Positions 819-47,038 of a DNA stretch of 64,000 nt are shown here, one piece after another. The DNA comes from Rebecca billardiae RCC1528 (lineage: Eukaryota > Protista > Haptophyta), in NCBI GenBank assembly GCA_965240325.2, contig OZ251223.1, positions 930,001-994,000 of the forward strand, written 5' to 3'. Under the pieces are notes generated by a model, which ran no database searches, was not told the DNA's origin, and saw nothing but the letters and a program-made list of their open reading frames with translations. Position numbers and translations under genes: made by a program. Position 1 is the first letter of the stretch, and every line of letters starts with the position of its first letter.

Positions 819-1913
819 CAAGGGTGGTCAGGGTCGCCGACTCCAGTGGGCAGTGGCGTCCGGCGCCGGCCGCCGGAGCTTCACCTCCGATTTTTTGCAG
901 CGGCGCGGCGCGCGGGGCCGCCGCCGCTGTGGCGGGCCGCTCGGGGCGTGCACGGCGTGGGCTCGTGCGGCCGCTGCCGCGCACGCCGAGCGATCCGGCG
1001 CGGGCTCGCGGCTTGTCGATGGCCTCGCGCGCCGCAGCGCGACGCGCGCCTTGCCTAGCTTCGCCTGTCTCGCGCCTTGGCCGCCGTGCACGCGTGCGCC
1101 GCCAAACCGCAAGCTCGGCATAGCTCTCAGCCGAGCGTGCACGTGCCTTGCGCGACGCGACGCGGGCATTGCCGGCGGGTGATGTAGCCGTAGTGCGAGC
1201 GCGCGTCGTGAAGCCTCGGCGCGGATCGTGAGTGTCTTCAACGTCTCGGTCAGCTGTCGACAACAGCTGACGGCACCAACCACCAATGATGGACACCACG
1301 GTCCTCCGTTGAACGACTCTCAGGGCTATCGCGACGCTGCAACTCGTGAAGACTAGTCGGGCGTTGTTGTCAAGAAGACACACGCCACTATGTCATGCGT
1401 GCGGGCCTTGCGTGACGATGCGACATGGCGATCGCCCCGGCAAGAGAGTCAGTCGTCAAGCTTTCTGCTCAACGCACAGACGGTCCACGCGCGTACGCGG
1501 CATCGTCTCATTGCTCTCGATCCGCGCCGAGGCTTCACGACGCGCGCTCGCACTACGGCTACATCACCCGCCGGCAATGCCCGCGTCGCGTCGCGCAAGG
1601 CACGTGCACGCTCGGCTGAGAGCTATGCCGAGCTTGCGGTTTGGCGGCGCACGCGTGCACGGCGGCCAAGGCGCGAGACAGGCGAAGCTAGGCAAGGCGC
1701 GCGTCGCGCTGCGGCGCGCGAGGCCATCGACAAGCCGCGAGCCCGCGCCGGATCGCTCGGCGTGCGCGGCAGCGGCCGCACGAGCCCACGCCGTGCACGC
1801 CCCGAGCGGCCCGCCACAGCGGCGGCGGCCCCGCGCGCCGCGCCGCTGCAAAAAATCGGAGGTGAAGCTCCGGCGCCGGACGCCACTGGAGTCGGCGACC
1901 CTGACCACCCTTG
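819..1913. repeat. Long inverted repeat: arms 819-1228 and 1518-1913 (~400 bp, near-identical), ~290-bp unique spacer
   Basis: The reverse complement of 819-1228 matches 1518-1913 except for two 7-nt insertions in the left arm; the same peptide appears in opposite-strand ORFs 828..1286(-) and 1346..(+). Confidence 0.95.
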
Positions 1914-6395: not shown

Positions 6396-9300
6396 ATGGC
6401 CGGGCGGCGCGCGCTCGTGATTGGGGGTGGGATCTCGGGAGTGGCGGTATCGCGCTTCCTGGCGAGGGCTGGGTTGGGCGTCACGCTCCTCGAGAAGGGC
6501 CCGCAGCTCTGTGGCGGCGCGTACGCGCAACGTTCTCCCCGCTCATCCACGCGCGTGCGCGCGTACGCGCGCGCCCCCGCGCGCACCGAGCGCCAGCTGA
6601 TGTGCACCGTGCCCGCCCGCCACGCGCGCTCGTCGCAGGACGTGGCACGCAGCGGGCCTCGTCACGCGCTTCGGCGGCAGCCCGAAGCTCAAGAAGCTCC
6701 ACGTCCGCGCGGTGGACATGATGATGGCCGTGCACGAAGAACACGACGTGGACATGCACATCACCGGCTCGGTGCGCCTCATCGAGAAGGGCGACGCCGA
6801 CCGGCTTGCCGAGGCGAAGCACCACGTGGCGATGGCCTCGCTGTACGACAACCCAGCGTACCCGACCCGGCTGATCAGCGTCGACGAGATCGCCGAGCTC
6901 CACCCACTCGTCAGCACGGAGGGGATCGAGGTGCGTCGGCGCGAGCCCCGGGGCGCGCGCCGAGCCGTTGGCGCGCTCTCGCGGCGCGCAGCGGCGTAGC
7001 GGCGCGCGGCGCTGCCCTGCGCATCCCGCGATTGAGCTCGCTTCGCGCGCGCCGCTCCGCGCGCAGTGCGGGGTGTGGACCCCGTCCGACGGCGACGTCG
7101 ACCCAACCCGGCTGACCAACTGCCTCGCCTCGCTGGCCAAGGCCTCGGGCGCGCAGCTGCGTCTGGGCGTGGGCGTGGAGGGCGTGGTCAAGCGGCCGGA
7201 CGGCGCGTTCGAGGTGCGCACGGACACGGAGGAGGTGCTCGAGGCGGACATTGTGGTACGCCACGCCGCGCCGCGCCGGCCCGCGCGCCGCGCGCCGCGC
7301 GCACTCGCTCTGCTGCTCCGCTCACGCGCGCGCCCTTGGCTGCGCGCGCGTCCGGCGTGCGCGCGCGCTGCGGCCTCGGCCCCGGGCGCCGCACAGATCA
7401 ACTGCGCCGGCCTGTGGACGCGCAAGGTCGCGCGGATGCTCGGCATCGAGGTGCCCGCCGTGGTGATCGAGCACCAGTACGTGATCTCGGAGGCGATCCC
7501 GGCGATCCTCGAGCGGCAGGCAGCCGGGCTTCCGCGGCTGCCCGTGCTGCGCGACCTGCGCGCCTCGTCCTACATCCGGCAGGAGCGCGCGGGCCTGCTG
7601 GTCGGGCCGTACGAGGAGGAGTGCAAGATCACCGAGTGGGGCGACGCGCCGCCCGGCTGGTGGACGATGGACCTCTTCCCGGACGCGCTCGAGCGCATCG
7701 AGGAGAACCTCGTCGGCTGCTGCGAGGCGGTGCCGGCGCTCGGCGAGGTCGGGATCGCGTCGGTGGTGAACGGCCCGACGATCTGGGCGTCGGACGGTCT
7801 CGCGCGGGTCGGGCGCTCGACCGTGCCGGGTCTGTACGACCTGAATGTGCAGACGTACGGCATCGCGCAGTCGCTGCCGCTCGCGCACTGGCTCTCCGCC
7901 CTCATCGTCGACGGCGAGGAGCCGTACGCGCTGCCGGACCTGTGCGCGCTCCGCTTCGGCGGCGCCAGCCCGTGGACGCCAGAGCCGTACGTGCACGCCA
8001 AGGTGGCCGAGACGTACTCGTGCAACAACCGCGTCGCGTACCCGTTCGAGAACCGCTCGGCGGGGCGCGAGCACCTGCCGCGCACGCCGCTGCACGCGCA
8101 GCTCGAGAGCGCCGGCGCCGTCTTCGGCCTGGGCGCGGGCGGGGTGCAGTACCCGCTGTACTTCCGAGGGAGCGCCGGCGGCGGCGCAAGCGCGGGCGCG
8201 CGCGACGGCGCGAGCGGCGGCGGCGGCGGCGCGGCAGCGTCGGAGTGCCGCTCATTCTTCGATCACGCGTGGGCGCCGATCGCCGACGCCGAGGCGCAGC
8301 ACGTGCTCAGCGCCGTCGGCATCGCGCACGCCCCGTTCTCCAAGTTCGTCGTCTCCGGCGCCGGCGCGCGCGCGTGGCTCGACAGGCTCACGACCAACGC
8401 GCTGCCCGCCGTCGGCCGCACGCGGCTGACGTACGCTCTTACGCCGACCGGTCGGATCTGGGCAGAGTTCACGGCGGTCGGGCTCGAGGACGGCGGGTAC
8501 TACCTGATCGGCGCGCGCGACAGCGCGACTCTCGACCATGCGCGGCTCGCCGAGGCCCTCCCGCCCGACGGCTCCGTCTCCGTCATCGACCTGACCTCCG
8601 CGGTCGACGCCCTGCACATCGCCGGCCCGCACGCGCCCGCGCTGCTGAGCAGCCTCACCGCCGGCGAGGCGGAGGCGGTGCCGTTCCTCGGCATGCGCGA
8701 GATGCGCGTCCTCGGCGTGCCGACGCGGCTGCTCCGCGTCTCCTTCTCCGGCTGCCCCGGGTACGAGCTCCACGCCGACGCCGCGCACATCGCCGAGCTG
8801 CACGCCGCGATCGCCGCGCACCCGAGCGCGTTCGAGGCGCGCCTCAAGCCATTTGGCAGCTATGCGCTCAACGCGCTGCGCATCGAGAAAGGGTTCAAGC
8901 TCGGCGCGGACCTCGACTTTGCGCACTACACCGAGGCCGGGATCGGCCCGTTCGTCAAGCCGGGCAAGCCCGGCGGGCCCTTCGTCGGCGAGCTCGCGCC
9001 GGACGCCGCGCCGGTCGCGGCCAAGCGCGCGGCCGTGTTTGCGGTGCGCACCTCGGCCTCGGCCGCGTGGAGCGTGCCGTCGGACGCGCCCGTGCGCGAC
9101 GCGGCGGGCGAGCTCGTCGGGTACACGACCTCGGCGGCGCGCGGCGCGCAGACCGGGGGCACCGTGGCGCTCGGCTTCGTGCTCAGCCCGCCGCACGAGC
9201 CGCTCCCCACGAGCGACGGCTGGGCCGTCGAGGCCTACGGCGAGAGCTGGCCGGTGGAGCTGCTGGCAAAGCCACCGGTCGCGGTGAGCGGCCGCCCAGC

Positions 9301-9397
9301 GCCGAGCGCGCAAGCGCAGGCAGACGCGACCGCGGCGGTCGCGGCGGCGGCCGCAGCGGCCGTGCGGTCCGAGCGCGCCACGCAAGCTGCCGGATAG
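6396..9397 (+). CDS. Dimethylglycine dehydrogenase-like flavoprotein (DAO + FAO_M + GcvT + GcvT_C); introns 6521-6638, 6931-7066, 7256-7396
   Basis: GGGISG FAD motif; spliced GGATWHAAGL covalent-FAD histidine motif; DGDVDP, INCAGLW, EHQYVISE, LPVLRD..SYIRQE, RVSFSGCPGYELH, LRIEKG; GT-AG introns restore the frame. Confidence 0.9.
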
Positions 9398-10142
9398 CGG
9401 CTCCTACGCACACATCACACTCCCGACCGCCCTCCGAGCCCGAGCGGCCACGCACGCGCAGCAGAGCCTGGCTGATGAGCGCGTAGCATGAGCGCCGAGG
9501 CCAGTGGCGCATGCCGGGGGCAGTGGCTCTCATCCGTCACGGCCGTCACCGATCGTGCGCGCCCAGGCTGGCCCTGCGAGCGCGTGCAGAATAAATGGCG
9601 CGCGCCCTAGTCCTGGTAGAGGACTGAGCCTGCAGACCATCGTCCATTGCCATCCTGGCCGCGGCGAAAGCAAGCTACTCTGACAGGGCAGCCTGCGCAC
9701 GGCGGATGCCAGCACGGCGGCAGCCGAGCCGACGCTTGCATCGGTGAGCTCGTTCCGAGGATGGGTCTGAGGGCGACGGTCCTGCATTTCACCAGTTTGT
9801 GGCGAGAAATGGCGGAAAAGCCGAAAAGGCCGAATCTCGCCCTGGCACTGCGGGCGGAATCGCGGATCTTGCCCATCATTCGAGTTCAGGCTCACTTTAG
9901 GGACGTTTGGGGTTGGAAACGCCGGTTTGGCGCACCTTGCGCACGACGATTCCCTCCGGGCTCGGTGTATCTCTCGGCGCGCCCGAAAAGGCGCCCACCC
10001 CGGCGCGCACGGGCCAATCGGCACACGGGTTTCAGGACGGATGGTGCCCCTCCGAGAGCGCTCCGGCCGTGACCACCTGAAGACGGCCAAACAGGCGCAG
10101 GCTGACCGAGCGACCGACGCGGACGGGCTGCGCGCGGAGTCG

Positions 10143-13100
10143 ATGCGCACTTGCGCGCTCGCGCGCACGCCGGCGAGCGCATGGGGGACGTACGCGACGG
10201 CGCGCGCGTGCATCCGGGCCCTCTCATCCCGCGCAGCGGCGCTGCCCTCCTCCGTCGACGTCGCCGTCGTCGGCGGCGGCTCCGTCGGCGCGGCGACTGC
10301 GTACCACTTGGCGCGCAAGGGCCTGAGCGTGGCGCTGCTCGAGGCGCACCAGCTGACGGCGGGGACGACGTGGCACACGGCGGGAATGCTCTGGCGGCTG
10401 CGCCCCTCCTACGTCGAGAACGAGCTCAACGCGCACTCCCGCGCGATGGCCCTCCACTTCGAGGCCGACGAGTCGATCGGGATCAAGTCCTGGCACGAGA
10501 ACGGCGGCCTCTTCATCGCGTGCGCGCGCGAGCGGCTCGCGGAGTACGAGCGGCTGGCTGAGACGGGGCGGTACTACGGGATCGAGTCGCACATCCTCAC
10601 GCCGAGCGAGGTGCGCGAGGTCCACCCGCTCCTCGAGGTCGGCGATGTCGTCGGCGCGCTGCACTCGCCGAGCGACGGCACCATCGACGCGAACGCGCTC
10701 GTGCGCGCGTACGCGCGCGCCGCGCGCAAGCTGGGCGTGACGGTGGCGGAGGGCGTGCGCGTGGCGTCGCTCGAGACGGAGCAGACGACGAGCCCGTTCG
10801 GCGAGCCGGTCACGCGCGTGCTCGGCCTCCGCACCGCGTGCGGGCAGCGCGTGTCCACCGCGCTGGGCGTTGTCAACGCGTGCGGCGCGTGGGCGCCCGC
10901 GCTCGCCGCGATGGCGGGGGCGCAGCTGCCGCTGCTCGCGATGAAGCACGCGTACATCGTGACCGAGTCGATCGAGGGGATGCACGGCGACCTGCCCAAC
11001 GTGCGCGACCACGACCTCAGCGTCTACCTCAAGGCGCGCGCCACCGAATCGCGCCGCGCGCATGCGCGCGCGCCCGCGCGCGCGCCCAGCGCGTCGGATC
11101 CGGCCTCACACCGCACCGCCGCGCGGCCGATCCCCCGCTCCCCGCGCGCGCAGGCGCAGGGCAGCGCGCTCGCGCTGGGCGGGTACGAGCACAACCCCGA
11201 GTTCTGGCACGCCGTCGACCCGGACTTTTCGTTCGGCCTCTTTGACCTCGACTGGGACACGTTCGGTCAGAACCTGGACGGCCACTTCAGGCGCTGCCCG
11301 GCGACGGAGACGGCGGGCGTGGCGTCGACGGTGTGCGGGCCCGAGTCGTTCACGCCGGACCACAAGCCGCTGCTCGGCCCGCACCCCGGCGTGCGCGGCC
11401 TCTTCAACGCGTGCGGCTTCAACTCCGCAGGCATCATGCTCGCCGGCGGCGTCGCGCGCGAGCTCGCGAGCTGGATGGTCGACGGCTCGTCCGAGCTCGA
11501 CCTCTTCGGGTACGACTGCGCGCGCTTCCACCCGGAGTCGGTGGCGGACGCGGGCTGGGTGCGCGCGCGGACGCACGAGGCGTACGCGAAGAACTACGCG
11601 ATCGTCTTCCCGCACGACGAGCCGCTCGCCGGCCGCGGCGCGCGCCGCTCCGCGCTGCACGACGCGCTCCTCGCGCGCGGCTGCGTCTTCCAAGAGCGGC
11701 ACGGCTTCGAGCGGCCGGGCTGGTTCGTGCGCTCGTCGGCGGACGCGGCGGCGGCGAAGGCGAAGGCGGAGGGCGGGGCGGGGCCGGCGGGCTGCCTCGC
11801 GCCCAGGCCGTACGACTACTACGGCGCGTACCCGCCGGGCGACGCGTGGCGGCTGCTGCCGGACGCGGGCGCGGACGTGGGCTGGGCGGCGCACGCCGAG
11901 CACCCGTACTTGGATGCGCTCGCGGCCGAGCTCACCTTTGGCTGGCCGGGCTCGCACGCGCGCGTCGCGGCCGAGTGCGCCGCGGCGCGCACGGGCGTGG
12001 CGATCTTCGACCAGTCGTACTTCGCCAAGCTCGAGGTGCGCGGCGCGGACGCGCACGCCGCGCTGCAGTACGTGTGCGCCGCCGACCTCGACGGCCGCGC
12101 GAGCGGCGCGGTCGTCTACACGCCGCTGTGCAACGCGCAAGGCGGCGTCGAGGCGGACCTGACGGTGACGCGGCTGCCGCCGAGCGCCGCCGCGTCCTCG
12201 GCGGCCTTCTACATCTGCACGGGCGGCGCGACCGCGACCAAGGACCGCGAGTGGATCTCCCGCGCGCTCGAGGGGCGCGGGTACGACGTGAGTCTCACAG
12301 ACGTGTCCGCCGAGCGCGCGCTGCTGTCAGTGCAGGGGCCGCACAGCGCCGCGCTGCTCGAGGCGCTGCTCGACGGCGCGGGGCGCGAGGCGCTGCGCGC
12401 GCTGCCGTTCGCGAGCTGCGCCGAGCTCAGCGTCGCCGGCGTGCCGGACGTGCGCTGCCTCCGGCTCACCTTCGTCGGCGAGCTCGGCTTTGAGCTGCAC
12501 GTGCCGGCGGCGCACGCGGCGCGCGTGCACGCAGCGCTGCACGAGGCTGCGGCGCCGCTGCGCGCAGCGGGCGTCGCGGTCGAGGACGCGGGGTACCACG
12601 CCGTCGACTCGCTCTCGGCGGAGAAGGGCTTCCGGCACTACCACGCCGACCTCTCCGCCGCGGACACGCCGCTCGAGGCCGGCATCGGCTTCACCGTCCT
12701 GCCGAAGCTCAAGAGTCCGGATGCACCGGACTTTGTCGGCCGGGCGGCGCTCGAGCGCGCGCGCGAGGCCGGGCTGCGCCGACGGCTGGTGTGCGTGACG
12801 CTCGACGACCCCGCCGTCGCGCTGCACGGCTCGGGCGCGACGCTGTGGCGCGACGGCGAGTGCGCGGGCGTCGTGCGCCTCTGCGCGTACGGCCACACCA
12901 TCGGCCGCTCGATCGCCTACGGGTACGTGCGCCGCGCCGCCGAGTCGGGAGCCGCGCGGCCGGACGAGTCCGCGTGCGATCGCTCTGGAGAGCGCGTCAC
13001 GCCGGAGTGGCTGCGCGGCGGCACGTGGCAGGTCGGCGACCGCGGCGCACGGCATGCCGCGACGCTGCACCTCAAGGCCCCGTTCGACCCGGACAACGCG

Positions 13101-13247
13101 CGCGTGCGCGGCGAGTACCCGCAGCCGCGCGCCGCCGGCGCGGCCGCGCTGTCGGAGCCGCAGCCGTCTGTGACGGTGGCCGCTGGCGCCGGGCCGTCGC
13201 CAGGGTCGTCCCATCAGCAGCAGCATGCGTCGCAGTCCCAGCAATGA
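10143..13247 (+). CDS. SARDH: Sarcosine dehydrogenase-like mitochondrial flavoprotein; probable GC-AG intron 11034-11153
   Basis: Arg/Ala/Ser-rich transit-like N-terminus; GGGSVG, TAGTTWHTAG, NVRDHDLSVYLK, CGPESFTPDHKPLLG, GFNSAGIMLAGG, YAKNY, FQERHGFERPGWF, FVGELGFELH, LSAEKGFRH and TPLEAG match SARDH-type motifs. Confidence 0.88.
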   Translation: MRTCALARTPASAWGTYATARACIRALSSRAAALPSSVDVAVVGGGSVGAATAYHLARKGLSVALLEAHQLTAGTTWHTAGMLWRLRPSYVENELNAHSRAMALHFEADESIGIKSWHENGGLFIACARERLAEYERLAETGRYYGIESHILTPSEVREVHPLLEVGDVVGALHSPSDGTIDANALVRAYARAARKLGVTVAEGVRVASLETEQTTSPFGEPVTRVLGLRTACGQRVSTALGVVNACGAWAPALAAMAGAQLPLLAMKHAYIVTESIEGMHGDLPNVRDHDLSVYLKARATESRRAHARAPARAPSASDPASHRTAARPIPRSPRAQAQGSALALGGYEHNPEFWHAVDPDFSFGLFDLDWDTFGQNLDGHFRRCPATETAGVASTVCGPESFTPDHKPLLGPHPGVRGLFNACGFNSAGIMLAGGVARELASWMVDGSSELDLFGYDCARFHPESVADAGWVRARTHEAYAKNYAIVFPHDEPLAGRGARRSALHDALLARGCVFQERHGFERPGWFVRSSADAAAAKAKAEGGAGPAGCLAPRPYDYYGAYPPGDAWRLLPDAGADVGWAAHAEHPYLDALAAELTFGWPGSHARVAAECAAARTGVAIFDQSYFAKLEVRGADAHAALQYVCAADLDGRASGAVVYTPLCNAQGGVEADLTVTRLPPSAAASSAAFYICTGGATATKDREWISRALEGRGYDVSLTDVSAERALLSVQGPHSAALLEALLDGAGREALRALPFASCAELSVAGVPDVRCLRLTFVGELGFELHVPAAHAARVHAALHEAAAPLRAAGVAVEDAGYHAVDSLSAEKGFRHYHADLSAADTPLEAGIGFTVLPKLKSPDAPDFVGRAALERAREAGLRRRLVCVTLDDPAVALHGSGATLWRDGECAGVVRLCAYGHTIGRSIAYGYVRRAAESGAARPDESACDRSGERVTPEWLRGGTWQVGDRGARHAATLHLKAPFDPDNARVRGEYPQPRAAGAAALSEPQPSVTVAAGAGPSPGSSHQQQHASQSQQ

Positions 13248-13969
13248 TAGAAGTATGTTGACGGCATTGGAATCAGCAGGCGGCAGGATGACCTGATCCG
13301 TCACTAGACACTAGCCAGTCTAACTGCTGCGTCTGCAGTGCTAGCTGCCCGTTTCATCAGTTGAAGTTCGGCTACTCTGTTCTCAGTTATTCTGACTGTT
13401 GTCTGTTCTGACGAGTTCAACGGTTATTTATTATTATATTTATTACGGTTCCGCGGCCGCGCCCCCGCCCGCGGTCGCGGAGCACTGTGTCGCGCGTCAA
13501 TCAATCAGTGCGCGCACGCGTGCCTCGGGCTGCGGGCAACTGCCAAGCTGGCTCTGGCAGCGCATGCTCGCATTGCTCACGATCGAATACGGAATAATTG
13601 GCAGGCGCCAGCGTCGTCTACAGTTTACTAAGTAGATTAAGAGACGCACACAGCTCAGGCAGGCGCGATATTGACGCCCGCCAACTGTTACCGCCCATGA
13701 AGCCGTCGCTGATGGTAGCACCGTCGGAAGATTCGTTCAGCCGTCCGCCTGCGAGGCCTGGATCGGAGGGCTGCGGCCGCCTCGCGGCGCGCCAGCGCCC
13801 GTCGTCCTCGCCCCACCGTCGTCCACAAAACGTCGTCGCTTCTGGACAGTATCTTATTGACAATCAATGACAGCAAGGTCTTGATCACCGTCTGAATATC
13901 AAAGGACAGCGCAGTGCTTGCCAACGGCGGCGGCACGCACCTTCGTCGTCAACCTTGCCGCGCACAACG

Positions 13970-15691
13970 ATGGCGAGCCACGACGCCGGCGTCCGTATGC
14001 TCCGGCGCGTGGCGGGGCGAGGCGACGCACGTGCGACCTTCCTGCTGGCGAGGCGCACCGAATCGGGCGACGGCGTCGCGCGGGACGTCGACGAGGCGCA
14101 TCGCCTCTATGCCATCGCAGCGAATCGCGGGTTTGCGCAAGCGCAGCAACGGTTGGGCGAGATCTGCAAGGCCAAGCAGAATTGGGCCGAGGCTGCGCGC
14201 TGGTATCGGCTGGCGGCCCAGCAGGGCGATTCGGCAGCACAGGCCCAGATGGGCACGCTGTATGCACGAGGCGAGGGCGTGCCGCAGGACTGGGCCGAGG
14301 CGGCGCGCTGGTACCGGCTGGCGGCCGAGCAGGGCAATGCAGCTGCGCAGACCAGCCTGGGCTTGTGCTACGAACGAGGCGAGGGCGTGCCGCAGGATAT
14401 TGCCGAGGCGGCGCGCTTGTACCGGCTGACGGCCGAGCAGGGCTATGCAGCTGCGCAGAACAAGCTGGGCTGGTGCTACGAACGAGGCGAGGGCGTGCCG
14501 CAGGATATGGCAGAGGCGGTGCACTTGTACCGGCTGGCGGCCGAGCAGGGCTACACATCTGCGCAGTACAACCTGGGCTGGTGCTACCAACGAGGCGAGG
14601 GCGTGCCGCAGGACTTGGCAGAGGCGGTGCGCTTGTACCGGCTGGCGGCCGAGCAGGGCCATGCAGCTGCGCAGACCAGCCTGGGCTTGCGCTACAAACG
14701 AGGCGAGGGCGTGCCGCAGGATATGGCCGAGGTGGTACGCTTGTACCGGCTGGCGGCAGAGCAGGGCGATCCAACTGCGCAGTCCAACCTGGGCGTGTGT
14801 TACCAACGAGGCGAGGGCGTACCGCAGGATACGGCCGAGGCGGTGCGCTTGTACCGGCTGGCGGCCGAGCAGGGCGATTCAACTGCGCAGTACAACCTGG
14901 GCTTGCTCCACAATCGAGGCGAGGGCGTGCCGCAGGACACGGCCGAGGCTGCGCGCTTGTACCGGCTGGCGGCCGAGCAGGGCTATGCAGCTGCGCAGTA
15001 CAACCTGGGCCTATGCTACCAGCGAGGCAAGGGCGTGCCGCAGGACTGGGCCGAGGCTGTGCGCTTGTACCGGCTGGCGGCAGAGCAGGGCAATGCAACT
15101 GCGCAGTGCAAGCTGGGCGTGTGCTACCATCTCGGCGAGGGTGTGTCGCAAGATATGGCCGAGGCGGTGCGCCTGTACAGGCTGGCGGTCGAGCAGGGCA
15201 ATGTGGTTGCGCAGTACAACCTGGGCGAGTGCTACGCACACGGCAAGGGTGTGCCACCGGACTGGGCCGAGGCGGTGCGCTGGTACCGGCTGGCTCTCGA
15301 CGGTGGCGACCCAGAAGCCCACTCGGCATTGTCGCGCCTGCTGCTTGCAGGCGGGGCCGTGCAGCGCGACGTGGCGGAGGGAGTGCGGCTGCTGCGCCGC
15401 GGGCACGAGCTTGACGGCTCCGTGGTGGATCCGAGCAAGGTGCTCGGCGACTATGCCGGAGATCGCGAGGTGGTCGCTGCGTGCTGCATGGTCTGCGCCA
15501 AGTCGGGCCGTGGCGTGAAGAAGTGCGAGCGGTGCCTCGTGGCGGTGTTCTGCTGCCGCGAGCACCTGCGGAGCGCGTGGAAAACGCACAAGCCGCACTG
15601 CACGGAGTGGCGCGCCGCGGCGGCGGTGATGACTACGGCTGCCAATCAGCAGACTGAGACGGCAGCCGACGATCGTGGTGACTGCTCATGA
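13970..15691 (+). CDS. SEL1-like repeat protein with C-terminal MYND zinc finger, copy A (10 canonical 36-aa repeats plus caps)
   Basis: Repeated AQxxLGxxYxRGEGVPQDxAEAxRLYRLAAEQG; C-terminal CMVC...CERC...FCCREH...WKTHKPHC; intronless. Confidence 0.93.
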   Translation: MASHDAGVRMLRRVAGRGDARATFLLARRTESGDGVARDVDEAHRLYAIAANRGFAQAQQRLGEICKAKQNWAEAARWYRLAAQQGDSAAQAQMGTLYARGEGVPQDWAEAARWYRLAAEQGNAAAQTSLGLCYERGEGVPQDIAEAARLYRLTAEQGYAAAQNKLGWCYERGEGVPQDMAEAVHLYRLAAEQGYTSAQYNLGWCYQRGEGVPQDLAEAVRLYRLAAEQGHAAAQTSLGLRYKRGEGVPQDMAEVVRLYRLAAEQGDPTAQSNLGVCYQRGEGVPQDTAEAVRLYRLAAEQGDSTAQYNLGLLHNRGEGVPQDTAEAARLYRLAAEQGYAAAQYNLGLCYQRGKGVPQDWAEAVRLYRLAAEQGNATAQCKLGVCYHLGEGVSQDMAEAVRLYRLAVEQGNVVAQYNLGECYAHGKGVPPDWAEAVRWYRLALDGGDPEAHSALSRLLLAGGAVQRDVAEGVRLLRRGHELDGSVVDPSKVLGDYAGDREVVAACCMVCAKSGRGVKKCERCLVAVFCCREHLRSAWKTHKPHCTEWRAAAAVMTTAANQQTETAADDRGDCS

Positions 15692-15709
15692 TGAGCTGCT
15701 ACGTCTGCT

Positions 15710-16292
15710 ACCGTCCCGCCGGAAGCTCAAGAGCCCGGACGCACCGGGCTTCATCGGCCGAGCGGCGCTCGAGCGCGCACCTGAGGCCGGGCTGCGCCGC
15801 CGGCGTGCGCCGCCGACAGCCGTCGTTGAAAGTGTGCTTGACGCTCGACGACCCCGCCGTTGCGCTGCGCGGCCCTCTGGCGCGACGCTGTGGCGCGACG
15901 GCGTGTGCGCGGGCGTCGTGCGCCTCTGCGCGTACGGCCACACCATCGGCCGCTCGATCGCCTACGGGTACGTGCGCCGCGCCGCCAAGTCGGGAGCCGC
16001 GCGGCCGGACGAGTCCGCGTGCGATCGCTCTGGAGAGCGCGTCATGCCGGAGTGGCTGCGCAGCGGCACGTGGCAGGTCGGCGACCGCGGCGCGCGGCAT
16101 GCCGCGACGCTGCACCTCAAGGCCCCGTTCGACCCGGACAACGCGCGCGTGCGCGGCGAGTACCCGCAGCCGCGCGCCGCCGGCGCGGCCGCGCTGTCGG
16201 AGCCGCAGCCGTCTGTGACGGTGGCCGCTGGCGCCGGGCCGTCGCCAGGGTCGTCCCATCAGCAGCAGCATGCGTCGCAGTCCCAGCAATGA
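15710..16292 (+). pseudogene. Duplicated 3' fragment of the SARDH-like gene
   Basis: Matches 12693-13247; frameshifted and diverged in the first ~170 bp, near-identical afterwards; no 5' part of the gene. Confidence 0.88.
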
Positions 16293-17004
16293 TAGAAGTA
16301 TGTTGACGGCATTGGAATAAGCAGGCGGCAGGATGACCTGATCCGTCACTGGACACTAGCAGTCACTGCTGACGTCTGCTGCTGCCCGTTTCAGTTATTA
16401 ATTCGTCTCTTAAGTCTGCTTATTCTGAGTTCAACGGCGGTTTATTAATATATTATTCACGGTTCCGCGGCCGCGCCCCCGGCCGCGGTCGCGGAGCACT
16501 TATGTGTCGCGCGTCAATATCAATCAGTGCGCGCACGCGTGCCTCGGGCTGCGGGCAACTGCCAAGCTGGCTCTGGCAGCGCATGCTCGCGCATGCTCAC
16601 GATCGAATACGGAATAATTGGCAGGCGCCAGAGTCGTCTACAGTTTACTAAGTAGATGAAGAGACGCACACAGCTCTGAGCTCAGGCAGGCGCGATATTG
16701 ACGCCCGCCAACTGTCACCGCCCATGAGGCCATGAAGCCGTCGCCGATGGTAGCGCCGTCGGAAGATTCGTTCAGCCGTCCGCCTGCGAGGCCTGGATCG
16801 GAGGGCTGCGGCCGCCTCGCGGCGCGCCAGCGCCCGTCGTCCTCGCCCCACCGTCGTCCACAAAACGTCGTCGCTTCTGGACAGTATCTTATTGACAATC
16901 AATGACAGCAAGGTCTTGATCACCGTCTGAATATCAAAGGACAGCGCAGTGCTTGCCAACGGCGGCGGCACGCACCTTCGTCGTCAACCTTGCCGCGCAC
17001 AACG

Positions 17005-20000
17005 ATGGCGAGCCACGACGCCGGCGTCCGTATGCTCCGGCGCGTGGCGGGGCGAGGCGACGCACGTGCGACCTTCCTGCTGGCGAGGCGCACCGAATCG
17101 GGCGACGGCGTCGCGCGGGACGTCGACGAGGCGCATCGCCTCTATGCCATCGCAGCGAATCGCGGGTTTGCGCAAGCGCAGCAACGGTTGGGCGAGATCT
17201 GCAAGGCCAAGCAGAATTGGGCCGAGGCTGCGCGCTGGTATCGGCTGGCGGCCCAGCAGGGCGATTCGGCAGCACAGGCCCAGATGGGCACGCTGTATGC
17301 ACGAGGCGAGGGCGTGCCGCAGGACTGGGCCGAGGCGGCGCGCTGGTACCGGCTGGCGGCCGAGCAGGGCAATGCAGCTGCGCAGACCAGCCTGGGCTTG
17401 TGCTACGAACGAGGCGAGGGCGTGCCGCAGGATATTGCCGAGGCGGCGCGCTTGTACCGGCTGACGGCCGAGCAGGGCTATGCAGCTGCGCAGAACAAGC
17501 TGGGCTGGTGCTACGAACGAGGCGAGGGCGTGCCGCAGGATATGGCAGGGGCGGTGCACTTGTACCGGCTGGCGGCCGAGCAGGGCTACACATCTGCGCA
17601 GTACAACCTGGGCTGGTGCTACCAACGAGGCGAGGGCGTGCCGCAGGACTTGGCAGAGGCGGTGCGCTTGTACCGGCTGGCGGCCGAGCAGGGCCATGCA
17701 GCTGCGCAGACCAGCCTGGGCTTGCGCTACAAACGAGGCGAGGGCGTGCCGCAGGATATGGCCGAGGCGGTACGCTTGTACCGGCTGGCGGCAGAGCAGG
17801 GCGATCCAACTGCGCAGTCCAACCTGGGCGTGTGTTACCAACGAGGCGAGGGCGTACCGCAGGATACGGCCGAGGCGGTGCGCTTTTACCGGCTGGCGGC
17901 CGAGCAGAGCGACGCAGCTGCGCAGTACAACCTGGGCTTGCTCTACAAACGAGGCGAGGGCGTGCCGCAGGACTGGGCCGAGGCGGCGCGCTTGTACCGG
18001 CTGGCGGCCGAGCAGGGCAATGCAGCTGCGCAGACCAAACTGGGCTGGTGCTACGAACGAGGCGAGGGCGTGCCGCAGGACTTGGCCGAGGCGGCGCGCC
18101 TGTACCGGCTGGCGGCCGAGCAGGGCGATTCAATTGCGCAGACCAACCTGGGCGTCTTCTACAAACGAGGCGAGGGCGTGCCGCAGGATACGGCCGAGGC
18201 TGCGCGCTTGTACCGGCTGGCGGCCGAGCAGGGCTATGCAGCTGCGCAGAACAAGCTGGGCTGGTGCTACGAACGAGGCGAGGGCGTACCGCAGGACTTG
18301 GCCGAGGCGGCGCGCTTGTACCGGCTGGCGGCCGATCAGGGCGATCCAACTGCGCAGACCAACCTGGGCTTGCTCTACAATCGAGGCGAGGGCGTGCCGC
18401 AGGACTTGGCCGAGGCGGTACGCTTGTACCAGCTGGCGGCCGATCAGGGCTACGCCTCTGCGCAGGCCAACCTGGGCTGGTGCTACGCACGGGGCGGGGG
18501 CGTGCCGCAGGATATGGCGGAGGCGGTGCGCTTGTACAGGCTGGCGGCCGAGCAGGGTGATCCAGCTGCGCAGACCAAACTGGGCTTGCTCTACAATCGA
18601 GGCGACGGCGTGCCGCAGGACTTGGCCGAGGCGGTACGCTTGTACCAGCTGGCGGCCGATCAGGGCTACGCCTCTGCGCAGGCCAACCTGGGCTGGTGCT
18701 ACGCACGGGGCGGGGGCGTGCCGCAGGATATGGCAGAGGCTGTGCGCTTGTACCGGCTGGCGGCCGAGCAGGGCTATGCAGCTGCGCAGAACAAGCTGGG
18801 TTGGTGCTATGAACGAGGCGAGGGCGTACCGCAGGACTTGGCCGAGGCGGTGCGCTTGTACCGGCTGGCGGCCGAGCAGGGCGACGCAGCTGCGCAGACC
18901 AACCTGGGCTTGCTCTACAATCGAGGCGAGGGCGTGCCGCAGGATAAGGCCGAGGCTGCGCGTTTGTACCGGCTGGCGGCCGAGCAGGGCTATGCAGCTG
19001 CGCAGAACAACCTGGGCTTGCTCTACAAACGAGGCGAGGGCGTGCCGCAGGATATGGCCGAGGCGGCGCGCTTGTACCGGCTGGCGGCCGAGCAGGGCGA
19101 CGCAGCTGCGCAGAACAACCTGGGCGTCTTCTACAAACGAGGCGAGGGCGTGCCGCAGGATAAGGCCGAGGCTGTGCGCTTGTACCGGCTGGCGGCCGAG
19201 CAGGGCTATGCAGCTGCGCAGAACAACCTGGGCTTGCTCTACCGCGAGGGCGTGCCGCAGGACTGGGCCGAGGCGGCGCGCTTGTACCGGCTGGCAGCCG
19301 AGCAGGGCTATGCAGCTGCGCAGTACAACCTGGGCGTGTGCTACGAACGAGGCGAGGGGGTGCCGCAGGACTGGGCCGAGGCTGTGCGCTTGTACCGGCT
19401 GGCGGCAGAGCAGGGCAATGCAACTGCGCAGTGCAGCCTGGGCGTGTGCTACCATCTAGGCGAGGGCGTGCCGCAAGATATGGCCGAGGCGGTGCGCCTG
19501 TACAGGCTGGCGGTCGAGCAGGGCGATTCAACTGCGCAGTACAACCTGGGCGAGTGCTACGAACACGGCAAGGGTGTGCCGCAGGACTGGGCCGAGGCGG
19601 TGCGCTTGTACCGGCTGGCTCTCGACGGCGGCCAGCCAGATGCCCACTCGGCATTGGCGCGCCTGCTGCTTGCAGGCGGGACCGTGCAGCGCGACGTGGC
19701 GGAGGGAGTGCGGCTGCTGCGCCGCGGGCACGAGCTTGACGGCTCTGTGGTGGATCCGAGCAAGGTGCTCGGCGACTATGCCGGAGATGGCGAGGTGGTC
19801 GCTGCGTGCTGCATGGTGTGCGCCAAGTCGGGCCGTGGCGTGAAGAAGTGCGAGCGGTGCCTCGTGGCGGTGTTCTGCTGCCGCGAGCACCCGCGGAGCG
19901 CGTGGAAAACGCACAAGCCGCACTGCACGGAGTGGCGCGCCGCGGCGGCGGTGATGACTACGGCTGCCAATCAGCAGACTGAGACGGCAGCCGACGATCG

Positions 20001-20016
20001 TGGTGACTGCTCATGA
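17005..20016 (+). CDS. SEL1-like repeat protein with MYND finger, copy B (22 canonical repeats, one with a 2-aa deletion)
   Basis: Same termini as copy A; 430 aa longer (12 x 36 minus 2); open frame throughout. Confidence 0.93.
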   Translation: MASHDAGVRMLRRVAGRGDARATFLLARRTESGDGVARDVDEAHRLYAIAANRGFAQAQQRLGEICKAKQNWAEAARWYRLAAQQGDSAAQAQMGTLYARGEGVPQDWAEAARWYRLAAEQGNAAAQTSLGLCYERGEGVPQDIAEAARLYRLTAEQGYAAAQNKLGWCYERGEGVPQDMAGAVHLYRLAAEQGYTSAQYNLGWCYQRGEGVPQDLAEAVRLYRLAAEQGHAAAQTSLGLRYKRGEGVPQDMAEAVRLYRLAAEQGDPTAQSNLGVCYQRGEGVPQDTAEAVRFYRLAAEQSDAAAQYNLGLLYKRGEGVPQDWAEAARLYRLAAEQGNAAAQTKLGWCYERGEGVPQDLAEAARLYRLAAEQGDSIAQTNLGVFYKRGEGVPQDTAEAARLYRLAAEQGYAAAQNKLGWCYERGEGVPQDLAEAARLYRLAADQGDPTAQTNLGLLYNRGEGVPQDLAEAVRLYQLAADQGYASAQANLGWCYARGGGVPQDMAEAVRLYRLAAEQGDPAAQTKLGLLYNRGDGVPQDLAEAVRLYQLAADQGYASAQANLGWCYARGGGVPQDMAEAVRLYRLAAEQGYAAAQNKLGWCYERGEGVPQDLAEAVRLYRLAAEQGDAAAQTNLGLLYNRGEGVPQDKAEAARLYRLAAEQGYAAAQNNLGLLYKRGEGVPQDMAEAARLYRLAAEQGDAAAQNNLGVFYKRGEGVPQDKAEAVRLYRLAAEQGYAAAQNNLGLLYREGVPQDWAEAARLYRLAAEQGYAAAQYNLGVCYERGEGVPQDWAEAVRLYRLAAEQGNATAQCSLGVCYHLGEGVPQDMAEAVRLYRLAVEQGDSTAQYNLGECYEHGKGVPQDWAEAVRLYRLALDGGQPDAHSALARLLLAGGTVQRDVAEGVRLLRRGHELDGSVVDPSKVLGDYAGDGEVVAACCMVCAKSGRGVKKCERCLVAVFCCREHPRSAWKTHKPHCTEWRAAAAVMTTAANQQTETAADDRGDCS

Positions 20017-20034: not shown

Positions 20035-20628
20035 ACCGTCCCGCCGGAAGCTCAAGAGCCCGGACGCACCGGGCTTCATCGGCCGAGCGGCGCTCGAGCG
20101 CGCACCTGAGGCCGGGCTGCGCCGCCGGCGTGCGCCGCCGACAGCCGTCGTTGAAAGTGTGCTTGACGCTCGACGACCCCGCCGTTGCGCTGCGCGGCCC
20201 TCTGGCGCGACGCTGTGGCGCGACGGCGTGTGCGCGGGCGTCGTGCGCCTCTGCGCGTACGGCCACACCATCGGCCGCTCGATCGCCTACGGGTACGTGC
20301 GCCGCGCCGCCGAGTCGGGAGCCGCGCGGCCGGACGAGTCCGCGTGCGATCGCTCTGGAGAGCGCGTCGCGCCGGAGTGGCTGCGCAGCGGCACGTGGCA
20401 GGTCGGCGACCGCGGCGCACGGCATGCCGCGACGCTGCACCTCAAGGCCCCGTTCGACCCGGACAACGTGCGCGTGCGCTGCGAGTACCTGCAGCCGCGC
20501 GCCGCCGGCGCGGCCGCGCTGTCGGAGCCGCAGCCGTCCACTGTGGCCGCTGGCGCCGTGCCGTCGCCAAGGTCGTCCCATCACTCATCAGCATCAGCAG
20601 GCATGCGTAGGCTTCGCAGTCCCAGCAA
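20035..20628 (+). pseudogene. Second duplicated 3' fragment of the SARDH-like gene
   Basis: Matches 15710-16292, with more substitutions and insertions near its 3' end. Confidence 0.85.
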
Positions 20629-20996
20629 TAATATATCGTGGCCCGCGGTGCAGGGCGGAGCGCGTAGCGTGGAGCCCCGCCGGGGGCCCTCACTGCGTTG
20701 TCAAAAAGATCTTTTGATCAAAGAAAAGGGGACGGGGGACGATTTTGAGGGCTGTTGGAGGGTGAATTTTCGCTTTTTCGAGGGGTACACCGTCGTACAT
20801 TGCTGTCTATCCGCAAGAAGCGATTGACGAAATAAGCGCGCCCGCCAATTCGCCGTATGTCGATGGACGGACGTGGGATCAGATACCCGGGGGTGAAACA
20901 AGTGAGTATTCCTATCCCTCTTGTATGCTGAAGTACGAGTTTGCCGAGCGACGTTTGATTGTTTTGGGTCGAATTAACAGCTATGAGGCCAGATCG

Positions 20997-21222
20997 ATTC
21001 TTTTGAATAGTGCTTGTTCAAATACGTTACCCGCCTGTCTCGAAGGATGAACCGCCTCGTCATATCAAAAGAGATTCTTTATTTTAATAGCGCTTGTCCA
21101 ACCAAGTTACCCGCCTGCCTCGATGGATGAACCTCCTGTGTCATAATGAAGGGATTGTTTTGAATGGCGCTTGTTGAACCAAGTTACCCGTCTGTCTCGA
21201 TGGATGAACCTCCTGTGCCATA
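20997..21222. repeat. Three degenerate ~78-80-bp tandem repeats within an AT-richer island
   Basis: Core GCTTGTyvAAxxxGTTACCCGyCTGyCTCGAwGGATGAACC recurs near 21012, 21092 and 21169. Confidence 0.8.
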
Positions 21223-21269
21223 TGGGGGTAATGAAAGAAAAACTTCGGGTTACCCGCCCGCCAGCGTCT

Positions 21270-45148: not shown

Positions 45149-45204
45149 GAGACGGACGAGAGAGAGAGCTGAGAGAGCTGACACTGAGCCAGAGAGAGAG
45201 AGAG

Positions 45205-45270
<66 letters not shown>
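45149..45270. repeat. (GA)n microsatellite
   Basis: Pure GA run ~45208-45270 with a degenerate 5' flank. Confidence 0.9.
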
Positions 45271-45274
<4 letters not shown>

Positions 45275-45314: not shown

Positions 45315-46913
45315 TCAGCACTCTTCAACGGACTGGCGGAAGTCAGCATCACGACTCATCATTACTGATGCTGCCGCGGCGCGCCACTCCGTGCAGTGTG
45401 GCTTGTGCATTCTCCACGCGCTGCGCAGGTGCTCGCGGCAGCAGAAGACCGCCACGAGGCACCGCTCGCACTTCTTCACGCCACGGCCCGACTTGGCGCA
45501 CACCATGCAGCACGCAGCGACCACCTCGCGATCTCCGGCAAAGTCGCCGAGCACCTCGCTCGGATCCACCACGGAGCCGTCAAGCTCGTGCCCGCGGCGC
45601 AGCAGCCGCACTCCCTCCGCCACGTCGCGCTGCACGGCCCCGCCTGCAAGCAGCAGGTGCGCCAGTGCCGAGTGGGCCTCTGGCTGGTCGCCGTCGATGG
45701 CCAGCCGGTACCAGCGCACCGCCTCAGCCATATCCTGCGGCACGCCCTCGCCTCGTGCGTAGCACCAGCCCAGCTTGTTCTGCGCAGCTGCGCCGCCCTG
45801 TTCGGCCGCCAGCCGGTACCAGCGCACCGCCTCGGCCCAGTCCTGCGGCACACCCTTGCCGTGTACGTAGCACTCGCCCAGGACGTACTGCGCAGCGGCC
45901 TCGCCCTGCTCGGCCGCCAGCCGGTACCAGCGCACCGCCTCAACCCATTCCTGCGGCACGCCCTCGCCTCGTTCGTAGCACATGCCCAGGTTGTGCTGCG
46001 CACTTGAATCGCCCTGCTCGGCCGCTAGCCGGTACAGGCGCACCGCCTCGGCCCAGCCCTGCGGCATGCCCTCGCCTTGTTCGTAGCACACGCCCAGGCT
46101 GGTCTGCGCAGATGCGTGGCCCTGCTCTGCCGCCAGTCGGTACCAGCGCACCGCCTCTGCCTTATCCTGCGGCACGCCCTCGCCTTGCTGGTAGCACACG
46201 CCCAGGTTGTACTGCGCAGTTGAATCGCCCTGCTCGGCCGCCAGCCGGTACAGGCGTATGGCCTCGGTCCAGTCCTGCGGCACGCCCTCGCCTCGTTTGT
46301 AGAGGACGCCCAGGTCGCACTGCGCATCTGCACCGTCCTGCTCGGCCGCCAGCCGGTACCAACGCACAGCCTCGGCCATATCCTGCGGCACGCCCTCGCC
46401 TTGATGGTAGCACCTGCCCAGGTTGCACTGAGCATGTGCATCACCCTGCTCTGCCGCCAGCCGGTACAAGCGCACAGCCTCGGCCCAGTCCTGCGGCACG
46501 CCCATGCCATGTCTGTAGAGCAAGCCCAGGCGGTTCTGCGCACCTGCATCACCCTGATCGGCCGCCAGCCGGTACCAGCGCACCGCCTCTGCCCAGTCCT
46601 GCGGCACGCCATTGCCTCCTGCGAACAGTGTGCCCATCTGGGCCTGAGCAATCGAATCGCCCTGCTCCGCCGCCAGCCGGTACCAGCGCGCAGCCTCGGC
46701 CCAATTCTGCGTGGCCTTGCAGATCTCGCCCAACCGTTGCTGCGCTTGCGCAAACCCACGATTCGCTGCGATGACATAGAGGCGATGTGCCTCGTCGACG
46801 TCCCGCCTGACACCGTCGCCCGATTCGGTGCGCCTCGCCAGCAGGAAGGTCGCACGTGCGTCGCCTCGCCCCGCCACGCGCCGGAGCATACGGACGCCGG
46901 CATCGCTCGCCAT
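45315..46913 (-). CDS. SEL1-like repeat protein with MYND finger, dispersed copy C (9 canonical repeats)
   Basis: N- and C-terminal caps and MYND finger nearly identical to copies A and B; different repeat variants; different flanks. Confidence 0.93.
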   Translation of the reverse strand: MASDAGVRMLRRVAGRGDARATFLLARRTESGDGVRRDVDEAHRLYVIAANRGFAQAQQRLGEICKATQNWAEAARWYRLAAEQGDSIAQAQMGTLFAGGNGVPQDWAEAVRWYRLAADQGDAGAQNRLGLLYRHGMGVPQDWAEAVRLYRLAAEQGDAHAQCNLGRCYHQGEGVPQDMAEAVRWYRLAAEQDGADAQCDLGVLYKRGEGVPQDWTEAIRLYRLAAEQGDSTAQYNLGVCYQQGEGVPQDKAEAVRWYRLAAEQGHASAQTSLGVCYEQGEGMPQGWAEAVRLYRLAAEQGDSSAQHNLGMCYERGEGVPQEWVEAVRWYRLAAEQGEAAAQYVLGECYVHGKGVPQDWAEAVRWYRLAAEQGGAAAQNKLGWCYARGEGVPQDMAEAVRWYRLAIDGDQPEAHSALAHLLLAGGAVQRDVAEGVRLLRRGHELDGSVVDPSEVLGDFAGDREVVAACCMVCAKSGRGVKKCERCLVAVFCCREHLRSAWRMHKPHCTEWRAAAASVMMSRDADFRQSVEEC

Positions 46914-47038
46914 CCTTGAGTGCTACTACCGTACAGCTGTATACAGTTGACTAAGAATACAATCAGAGACTCCCCTACCCCCATACTTGATTCCTTTGAA
47001 GAGACGCGCACAGCTTAGCACCCTGACCGTCAGGCCGC

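What the first reader, a model, noticed from the sequence alone, without database searches (positions are those of the whole stretch)
13970..20016. SEL1-repeat/MYND proteins with hypervariable, combinatorially shuffled 108-bp repeats: a candidate diversifying receptor system
Seen: fixed N-cap, C-cap and MYND finger flank arrays of 10 (copy A), 22 (copy B) and 9 (copy C) repeats that are highly similar at the DNA level. The scaffold (GEGVPQD, AEA, YRLAAEQG) is nearly invariant. Variation concentrates in a few first-helix positions: after AQ (TS, NK, YN, SN, TK, TN, AN, NN, CK, CS, CD, HN, YV, NR), after LG (LC, WC, LR, VC, LL, VF, EC, RC, MC), after Y (E, Q, K, N, A, H, V, R), plus the inter-repeat turn and the residue after QD. 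The same micro-variants recur in different combinations, which implies sub-repeat recombination or conversion. Established: first-helix residues line the concave ligand groove of TPR/SEL1 solenoids, and internally conserved, shuffled repeats generate specificity in fungal NLRs (WD40, TPR, ANK) and brown-algal TPR/LRR genes. SEL1+MYND proteins do occur in algae. Inference: a programmable binding or immune-type receptor family, possibly anti-viral or for non-self recognition, with a per-repeat code.
Basis: partly seen in the sequence, partly recalled or inferred. Interest (0 to 1): 0.85.

Follow-up and report, generated by a model that had tools for sequence, protein, structure and literature searches.

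The report
Fast-varying Sel1-repeat zinc-finger adaptor genes
Three genes of a GC-rich alga encode a spring-shaped coil of near-identical units ending in a constant zinc finger; the units swap pieces with each other and change faster than neutral at the spots lining the coil's binding groove, as candidate immune sensors of fungi and brown seaweeds do, but no target or expression is known.

Summary
Observation confirmed. Three single-ORF genes (A 13970-15691, B 17005-20016, C 46913-45315) carry 10, 22 and 9 Sel1 repeats plus a MYND finger between near-constant caps. Twenty of 36 repeat positions are almost frozen. The variable ones coincide with the groove-contact residues of a solved Sel1 protein and of TPRs. 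At six groove codons chosen beforehand, pN/pS is 2.55; codon models give omega 2.1-2.5. The signal survives recombination- and GC-bias-aware nulls, but only at about p 0.01-0.05. Sub-repeat shuffling is real (PHI p=2e-4; linkage decays within about 12 codons). A and B form a tandem duplication through a repeated sarcosine-dehydrogenase tail; two alleles joined in the assembly cannot be excluded. Limits: the same positions vary in unrelated homogeneous Sel1 arrays (rho 0.72), Sel1+MYND is a common haptophyte architecture, there is no NTPase or effector domain, no TALE-like code, and no reads could be listed. Best reading: a diversifying, intracellular peptide-binding adaptor family that works like fungal and brown-algal conserved-repeat sensors but is not an NLR. 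The scan noted this family many times elsewhere in this genome. New variant of a known kind.

The parts
13970..15691 (+). Copy A: single-ORF Sel1-repeat/MYND gene, 573 aa
13970..14236 (+). Copy A N-cap with two degenerate repeats; identical to that of B
14237..15316 (+). Copy A array of 10 x 108-bp Sel1 units
15485..15601 (+). Copy A MYND finger (aa 506-544); sixth ligand His, conserved Gln replaced by Leu, Trp kept
17005..20016 (+). Copy B: single-ORF Sel1-repeat/MYND gene, 1003 aa
17272..19641 (+). Copy B array of 22 Sel1 units; units 11-12 and 13-14 are a recent two-unit duplication; unit 19 (19216-19317) has an in-frame 6-nt deletion
19810..19926 (+). Copy B MYND finger (aa 936-974), with Pro at 19891-19893 where A and C have Leu
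45315..46913 (-). Copy C: dispersed paralogue, 532 aa, 9 units at 46649-45678, MYND at 45509-45393; upstream DNA unrelated to that of A and B
12693..13250 (+). 3' end of the sarcosine-dehydrogenase-like gene (ORF 9927-13247): left member of the direct repeat that brackets the Sel1 gene
15710..16294 (+). Chimeric copy of the dehydrogenase tail between A and B: matches the downstream copy on its 5' side and the intact gene on its 3' side; switch at about 16063-16143
20035..20633 (+). Downstream degenerate copy of the dehydrogenase tail (right member of the direct repeat)

Best explanation
A family of soluble intracellular adaptors. The Sel1 superhelix grips an extended stretch of a target protein in its concave groove: the majority Asn at unit position 4 anchors the backbone, and positions 34, 36, 3, 7, 10 and 11 set specificity over pockets of about three repeats. 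The constant C-terminal MYND finger links the captured target to one fixed host partner. New specificities arise from point mutations at groove codons that are favoured by selection, then reshuffled by unequal crossing-over and short gene-conversion tracts among the 108-bp units within and between copies; whole genes multiply by segmental duplication. The most likely driver is a moving target from a parasite (virus, bacterium or mobile element). Shown: architecture, shuffling, omega above 1 (moderate strength), duplication junction. Inferred from related structures: groove location and peptide binding. Inferred only by analogy: MYND as output and the defence role.
For: Groove mapping: c5321 peptide contacts fall at helix-1 positions 0, 2, 5, 6, 9, 13, which are unit positions 34, 36, 3, 4, 7, 11 here (PMC3851747; helix limits from the model); HOP TPR ligand positions 2, 5, 6, 9, 12, 13 (PMC1261162). 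Selection: prior-chosen groove codons pN 0.429 vs pS 0.168; cross-validated between C and A/B ratio 2.2-2.3 raw, scaffold 0.36-0.41; MG94 M1a vs M2a p=4e-5, omega 2.26; two-block trees p=0.0013, omega 2.09. Recombination: PHI p=2e-4 to 2e-3, incompatibility 0.47 to 1.15 with distance; haplotype excess 0.47 of free shuffling for near codons vs 0.91 for far ones. Groove signatures distinct in 9/9, 18/21 and 8/8 units. No signal or membrane segment. Same evolutionary regime in Podospora NLR repeats (PMC4986451) and Ectocarpus TPR/LRR genes (PMC3341825).
Against: Two of 37 recombining neutral simulations reached 2dL 22-25, against 20-26 observed; 4 of 280 GC-biased null runs reached the pairwise ratio. 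The same positions vary in unrelated homogeneous Sel1 arrays. No NOD or catalytic effector domain. Scaffold singletons are enriched in amino-acid changes (omega 0.49 vs 0.16, not significant), and B has Pro in the MYND helix and a shortened unit, so some copies may be decaying. No expression data.
Confidence: 0.5

Rival explanations
1. Neutral repeat turnover. A recently amplified Sel1 unit is homogenised by conversion and unequal crossing-over, and drifts only at the structurally tolerant groove and N-cap positions. The genes are weakly expressed, loosely constrained members of a birth-and-death family with no changing ligand.
For: Variable positions are the generic tolerant ones of Sel1 arrays (rho 0.72 with 15 unrelated arrays). 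Four-fold GC is 0.79-0.81 vs 0.92-0.97 in most neighbours, which fits weak expression. Scaffold-damaging singletons occur. Neutral simulations with recombination reach the observed statistics about 1-5% of the time.
Against: Solvent-exposed helix-2 positions are nearly frozen (heterozygosity 0.08) while groove positions reach 0.68, the second-highest contrast beside 26 control arrays; codon 3 has 7 amino acids with no synonymous change; all frames intact, the one indel is in frame; every test points to omega near 2.
Confidence: 0.25
2. Diversifying selection is real but the target is endogenous: self/non-self or mating recognition between strains, or an expanding set of host proteins or transcription regulators that MYND couples to corepressor or Hsp90 machinery.
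For: The fungal precedents include allorecognition genes (PMC4986451). MYND fingers bind PXL-type motifs of corepressors and of the Hsp90 co-chaperone p23 (PMC6916684). No link to viral sequence: no relatives in viral contigs and only 14-33% identity to viral Sel1 folds.
Against: Proteins lack a signal or membrane segment, so cell-contact recognition would need to be intracellular. A dispersed, many-copy family (unchecked notes) fits parasite-driven birth and death better than a single compatibility locus.
Confidence: 0.15
3. TALE/PPR-like nucleic-acid reader with one base per repeat, or a template-directed (DGR-like) diversifier.
For: Near-identical repeats with few variable residues; Arg is the majority at groove position 11; variable codons often keep their third base.
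Against: Groove net charge is +0.56, +0.62 and -0.25 per unit and whole proteins are slightly acidic; six to nine positions vary, not two; adenines at constrained sites are invariant and G-consensus sites are as variable as A-consensus sites (0.51 vs 0.29); no reverse transcriptase among the ORFs scanned.
Confidence: 0.05
4. About the A-B tandem only (compatible with any of the above): A and B are two alleles of one locus that the assembly joined through the repeated dehydrogenase tail, rather than two adjacent genes.
For: The middle tail copy is a chimera of the intact gene and the downstream copy, as expected from either unequal crossing-over or a haplotype switch; about 1.15 kb of A and B differ at only 2 sites.
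Against: A real tandem duplication gives the same chimera. No two B units are identical and frames are intact, so the 22-unit array itself is not an assembler expansion. The intergenic stretch carries 15 substitutions and 24 indels in 719 nt.
Confidence: 0.2

Closest known systems
Fungal NLRs with highly conserved WD40/TPR/ANK repeats (Podospora HNWD family, Pa_2_10340; Dyrka et al. 2014, PMC4986451)
   Same: Internally conserved repeats, repeat-number differences, shuffling within and between genes, positive selection on the concave face.
   Different: No NACHT/NB-ARC domain and no N-terminal effector; repeat type is Sel1 (36 aa); a MYND finger sits at the C-terminus; no function shown.
Ectocarpus NB-ARC-TPR and ROCO-LRR candidate receptors (Zambounis et al. 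2012, PMC3341825)
   Same: Algal multigene families with shuffled repeats and diversifying selection on the concave face; birth and death.
   Different: There each repeat is an exon and an NTPase is present; here the genes are single ORFs, shuffle below the repeat level and have no NTPase.
Sel1+zf-MYND proteins of haptophytes and other marine eukaryotes (ESM Atlas clusters)
   Same: Domain architecture; 24 of 30 nearest clusters carry both families, scores up to 0.96.
   Different: Atlas representatives shown are short (110-334 aa); long homogeneous arrays and their selection regime were not found described in the papers searched. No close sequence relative of the caps was found.
Bacterial SLR proteins: E. 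coli c5321/EsiB (4bwr), H. pylori Hcp/SLR family, Legionella LceB and LpnE
   Same: Same fold (Foldseek E 1e-23 to 1e-11), same 13/7/13/3 repeat geometry, groove peptide binding by an Asn; positive selection on surface residues in H. pylori slr genes (PMC1941758).
   Different: Those are secreted, with divergent repeats and no MYND; selection there is between strains, not between repeats of one gene.

Membership tests
Sel1-like repeat (SLR) proteins | Tandem 36-aa Sel1 repeats above Pfam cut-off | tested here: met
   PF08238, 327-729 bits, 9-22 repeats
Sel1-like repeat (SLR) proteins | Alpha/alpha superhelix with 13/7/13/3 geometry | tested here: met
   AlphaFold model of C, pLDDT above 90 over the array; best PDB matches 6ok3 and 4bwr
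MYND finger proteins | Eight zinc ligands with MYND spacing | tested here: met
   PF01753 above cut-off in all three; sixth ligand is His
MYND finger proteins | Gln and Trp that contact the PXL ligand | tested here: inconclusive
   Trp kept, Gln replaced by Leu (A, C) or Pro (B); finger not modelled confidently
NLR / STAND immune receptors | Central NACHT or NB-ARC NTPase | tested here: not met
   No Pfam hit and no P-loop motif
NLR / STAND immune receptors | N-terminal signalling or effector domain | tested here: not met
   N-terminus is a cap of degenerate Sel1 repeats
High-internal-conservation (HiC) diversifying repeat domains | Over 85% self-identity across 100 aa or more | tested here: inconclusive
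   B 92% (met); A 81% and C 78% (not met)
High-internal-conservation (HiC) diversifying repeat domains | Positive selection on the concave face | tested here: met
   omega 2.1-2.5; robust p about 0.01-0.05; location by mapping to c5321 and HOP, not from my own coordinates
High-internal-conservation (HiC) diversifying repeat domains | Repeat reshuffling within and between genes | tested here: met
   PHI and linkage decay
High-internal-conservation (HiC) diversifying repeat domains | Repeat-number polymorphism among strains | not testable with these tools
   No sequencing run was listed; paralogues differ (10, 22, 9)
Ectocarpus-type exon-shuffled receptors | One repeat per exon | tested here: not met
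   Arrays are contiguous open reading frames
Diversity-generating retroelements | Reverse transcriptase, template repeat, adenine-specific variation | tested here: not met
   No RT among scanned ORFs; no adenine bias; the rest of the genome was not searched
TALE/PPR-type code proteins | One to three code residues per repeat on a basic groove, one base per repeat | tested here: not met
   Six to nine variable positions; groove charge mixed, negative in C; binding itself not tested

The most novel reading that the evidence does not exclude
Haptophytes carry an undescribed, NTPase-free immune receptor repertoire: many Sel1-MYND genes whose groove is re-dealt by frequent mitotic recombination among 108-bp units, giving clone-to-clone differences in resistance to giant viruses or other parasites, with the MYND finger as the common output.
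Probability: 0.15. Interest if true: 0.85.

Novelty: new variant of a known kind. Interest (0 to 1): 0.5.

Why it matters
How bloom-forming algae recognise intracellular parasites is largely unknown. A family with a frozen scaffold, a handful of selected groove residues and a constant adaptor gives concrete, testable candidates: strain amplicon sequencing, infection transcriptomes and pull-downs. It would extend the conserved-repeat diversification strategy of fungi and brown algae to a new repeat type (Sel1) and to proteins with no NTPase switch. The near-invariant natural scaffold is also a ready template for studying SLR groove specificity.

Tried and rejected
Exact look-up of the proteins failed. 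A cap+MYND query found no homologue; searches with repeats included were swamped by generic Sel1 proteins without MYND. No related loci in metagenome or viral contigs; the single DNA-pattern hit L001 is a short Sel1 ORF fragment with a divergent repeat, not a family member as far as can be seen. GY94 omega 4.8 was set aside because MG94 fits about 42 log units better. Star-tree result (2dL 80) was not relied on. DGR-like adenine mutagenesis rejected. Compensatory covariation between packing positions 23 and 8 not found (p=0.28). The bacterial promoter scan is irrelevant to a eukaryote. Five literature searches found no paper on Sel1-MYND evolution; subscription journals are not covered.

Full report
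Setting. The window is 59-81% GC and carries eukaryotic housekeeping genes (WD40/HELP, DEAD helicase, kinases, G-patch). The gene upstream of the finding is a sarcosine-dehydrogenase-like ORF whose best relative is from Prymnesium parvum at 64% identity, so a haptophyte-like alga is the likeliest host; the species was not identified.

Observation. A (13970-15691, +, 573 aa), B (17005-20016, +, 1003 aa) and C (46913-45315, -, 532 aa) are uninterrupted ORFs with 10, 22 and 9 Sel1 repeats and one MYND finger each. The 108-bp units are 79-85% alike. Numbering the A of 'AQ' as 1, twenty positions are almost frozen, and positions 3, 4, 7, 8, 10, 11, 13, 19, 34, 35 and 36 carry most of the variation. 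The caps are nearly constant. Units 1-5 of A and B are the same DNA (0-1 differences), so B1-B5 were dropped from the statistics, as were the first and last units of each array.

Origin of the A-B pair. A block of about 3 kb (3' end of the dehydrogenase gene, spacer, Sel1 gene) is repeated in tandem, and a third copy of the dehydrogenase tail follows B. The middle tail copy matches the downstream copy on its 5' side and the intact gene on its 3' side, switching at about 16063-16143. This is the mark of unequal crossing-over between two direct repeats. A haplotype switch in the assembly would leave the same mark, and no reads were listed, so two alleles remain possible (about 0.2). The 22-unit array is unlikely to be an assembler artefact: no two B units are identical and the only indel is an in-frame 6-nt loss. 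B shares its first six and last three units with A and has a mosaic middle with a recent two-unit duplication (B11-12 and B13-14; 128 nt exact). C is a dispersed copy with unrelated upstream DNA.

Where the variable residues lie. The model of C is a confident Sel1 superhelix with 13-residue helices and 7- and 3-residue loops, closest to Oxalobacter 6ok3 and E. coli c5321. Helix 1 runs from unit position 35 to 11. In c5321, which has the same geometry, helix 1 forms the concave face, and the residues that hold a peptide in the groove (D304, T306/A341, A309/Y272, N310/N345, A313, R317/K280) fall at helix positions 0, 2, 5, 6, 9 and 13 (PMC3851747). These are unit positions 34, 36, 3, 4, 7 and 11 here. 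The HOP TPR contacts 2, 5, 6, 9, 12, 13 (PMC1261162) give 36, 3, 4, 7, 10, 11. The backbone-anchoring Asn of c5321 corresponds to position 4, which is Asn in 18 of 33 inner units. Position 8 is an inter-repeat packing residue in c5321 and position 19 starts helix 2, so not all variable sites are in the groove. This mapping is by numbering; I had no coordinates to compute surfaces.

Selection. Unit-wide pS is 0.167. With variable sites chosen on C and tested on A/B, or the reverse, pN/pS is 2.28 and 2.21 (column bootstrap 1.5-3.7), while the remaining sites give 0.36-0.41. With the six groove codons fixed beforehand from the TPR paper, pN is 0.429 and the ratio 2.55; neutral simulations with recombination reached this in 0 of 280 runs at equal base frequencies and 4 of 280 under an 88% GC bias, which is stronger than the 81% seen at four-fold sites of the units. 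MG94 site models give omega 2.1-2.3 on 25-31% of codons (M1a vs M2a p=4e-5), flagging 3, 4, 7, 10, 34, 35, 36. Separate trees for the two halves of the unit keep p=0.0013 and omega 2.09, but 2 of 37 recombining neutral simulations gave likelihood ratios of 22-25, near the observed 20-26. Positive selection is therefore likely, of moderate size, with an honest p of about 0.01-0.05.

Shuffling. The PHI test rejects a single tree (p=2e-4 to 2e-3), and incompatibility between sites in different codons rises from 0.47 to 1.15 with distance. Codons up to five apart show 0.47 of the haplotype excess of free shuffling, codons 12 or more apart 0.91; codon 36 of one unit is linked to codons 3 and 7 of the next (p=0.002, 0.004), so exchange is by short tracts that ignore the repeat register. 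Ten synonymous sites also show incompatibility (29% of pairs). Nothing points to a programmed mechanism: no adenine bias and no reverse transcriptase among the ORFs scanned.

How special is it? Among 26 unrelated long Sel1 arrays, fifteen have 65% or more internal identity and vary at the same positions (Spearman 0.72); the groove-versus-helix-2 contrast here (0.59) is near the top of their range (median 0.35, maximum 0.60). Many such database proteins are fused to caspase-like, trypsin-like or kinase domains. Sel1+MYND is a common architecture in marine eukaryotes, including haptophytes. So neither the architecture nor the site pattern is unique; what this locus adds is DNA-level evidence of selection and shuffling. 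No paper describing this for Sel1-MYND genes was found.

Mechanism. The proteins have no signal peptide or membrane segment, are slightly acidic, and have groove signatures that differ in 9/9, 18/21 and 8/8 units with mixed charge. This fits peptide binding in pockets of about three repeats, not a base-per-repeat code. MYND fingers are protein adaptors for PXL-type motifs (PMC6916684); here the Trp is kept and the Gln is replaced by Leu, or Pro in B, so the partner may be non-canonical and B's finger may be impaired. My best reading (0.5) is a variable-input, constant-output adaptor shaped by conflict with a parasite. Rivals are neutral turnover of weakly expressed genes (0.25; four-fold GC 0.80 against 0.92-0.97 in most neighbours; scaffold singletons), an endogenous target (0.15), and a nucleic-acid code or template system (0.05).

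Comparison. It works like the conserved-repeat domains of fungal NLRs (PMC4986451) and the Ectocarpus NB-ARC-TPR and ROCO genes (PMC3341825). It is not a member of either: there is no NTPase, no effector domain and no exon-per-repeat layout. Only B meets the 85%-over-100-aa criterion. Earlier notes of this scan report the same family on several pieces of this genome and reached a similar reading; I did not use them as support and could not check their loci.

Verdict. Real, correctly described, and probably under diversifying selection; function unshown. New variant of a known kind; interest 0.5.

Noticed in passing
P0122-P0269 set and hits: Many unrelated database proteins have internally homogeneous Sel1 arrays that vary at the same groove positions; many Sel1 hits are fused to caspase-like (PF00656), trypsin-like (PF13365) or kinase domains. 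This may be a wider, little-described class of diversifying SLR sensors, probably largely bacterial.
   Followed up: partly
window 13300-13460 vs 16345-16470: An AT-rich intergenic stretch differs between the two duplicated blocks by many small indels although the DNA on both sides is nearly identical; could be transposon footprints, older divergence overwritten by conversion, or consensus noise.
   Followed up: partly
window 13970-20016 and 45315-46913: Four-fold-site GC of the Sel1-MYND genes is 0.79-0.81, against 0.97 in the sarcosine dehydrogenase and 0.92-0.95 in several other genes: weak codon bias, or a foreign or young origin.
   Followed up: partly
window 20634-21223: The duplicated dehydrogenase tail ends abruptly at an AT-rich segment that contains a 77-bp tandem repeat (2.9 copies, 20996-21223); possibly the end of an inserted element.
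   Followed up: no
window 6968-13247: Two adjacent dimethylglycine/sarcosine-dehydrogenase-like ORFs on the same strand (already noted by the scan as part of a betaine demethylation cluster).
   Followed up: no
window 819-1232 and 1514-1913: 414-bp inverted repeat at 96% identity.
   Followed up: no
window 48385-50128: Two pairs of near-perfect direct repeats (194 bp at 100%, 307 bp at 99.7%), element-like.
   Followed up: no
window 46913-47039: Copy C lies head to head with a G-patch gene only about 125 bp away, and its stop is followed by an (AG)n microsatellite at 45191-45271.
   Followed up: no
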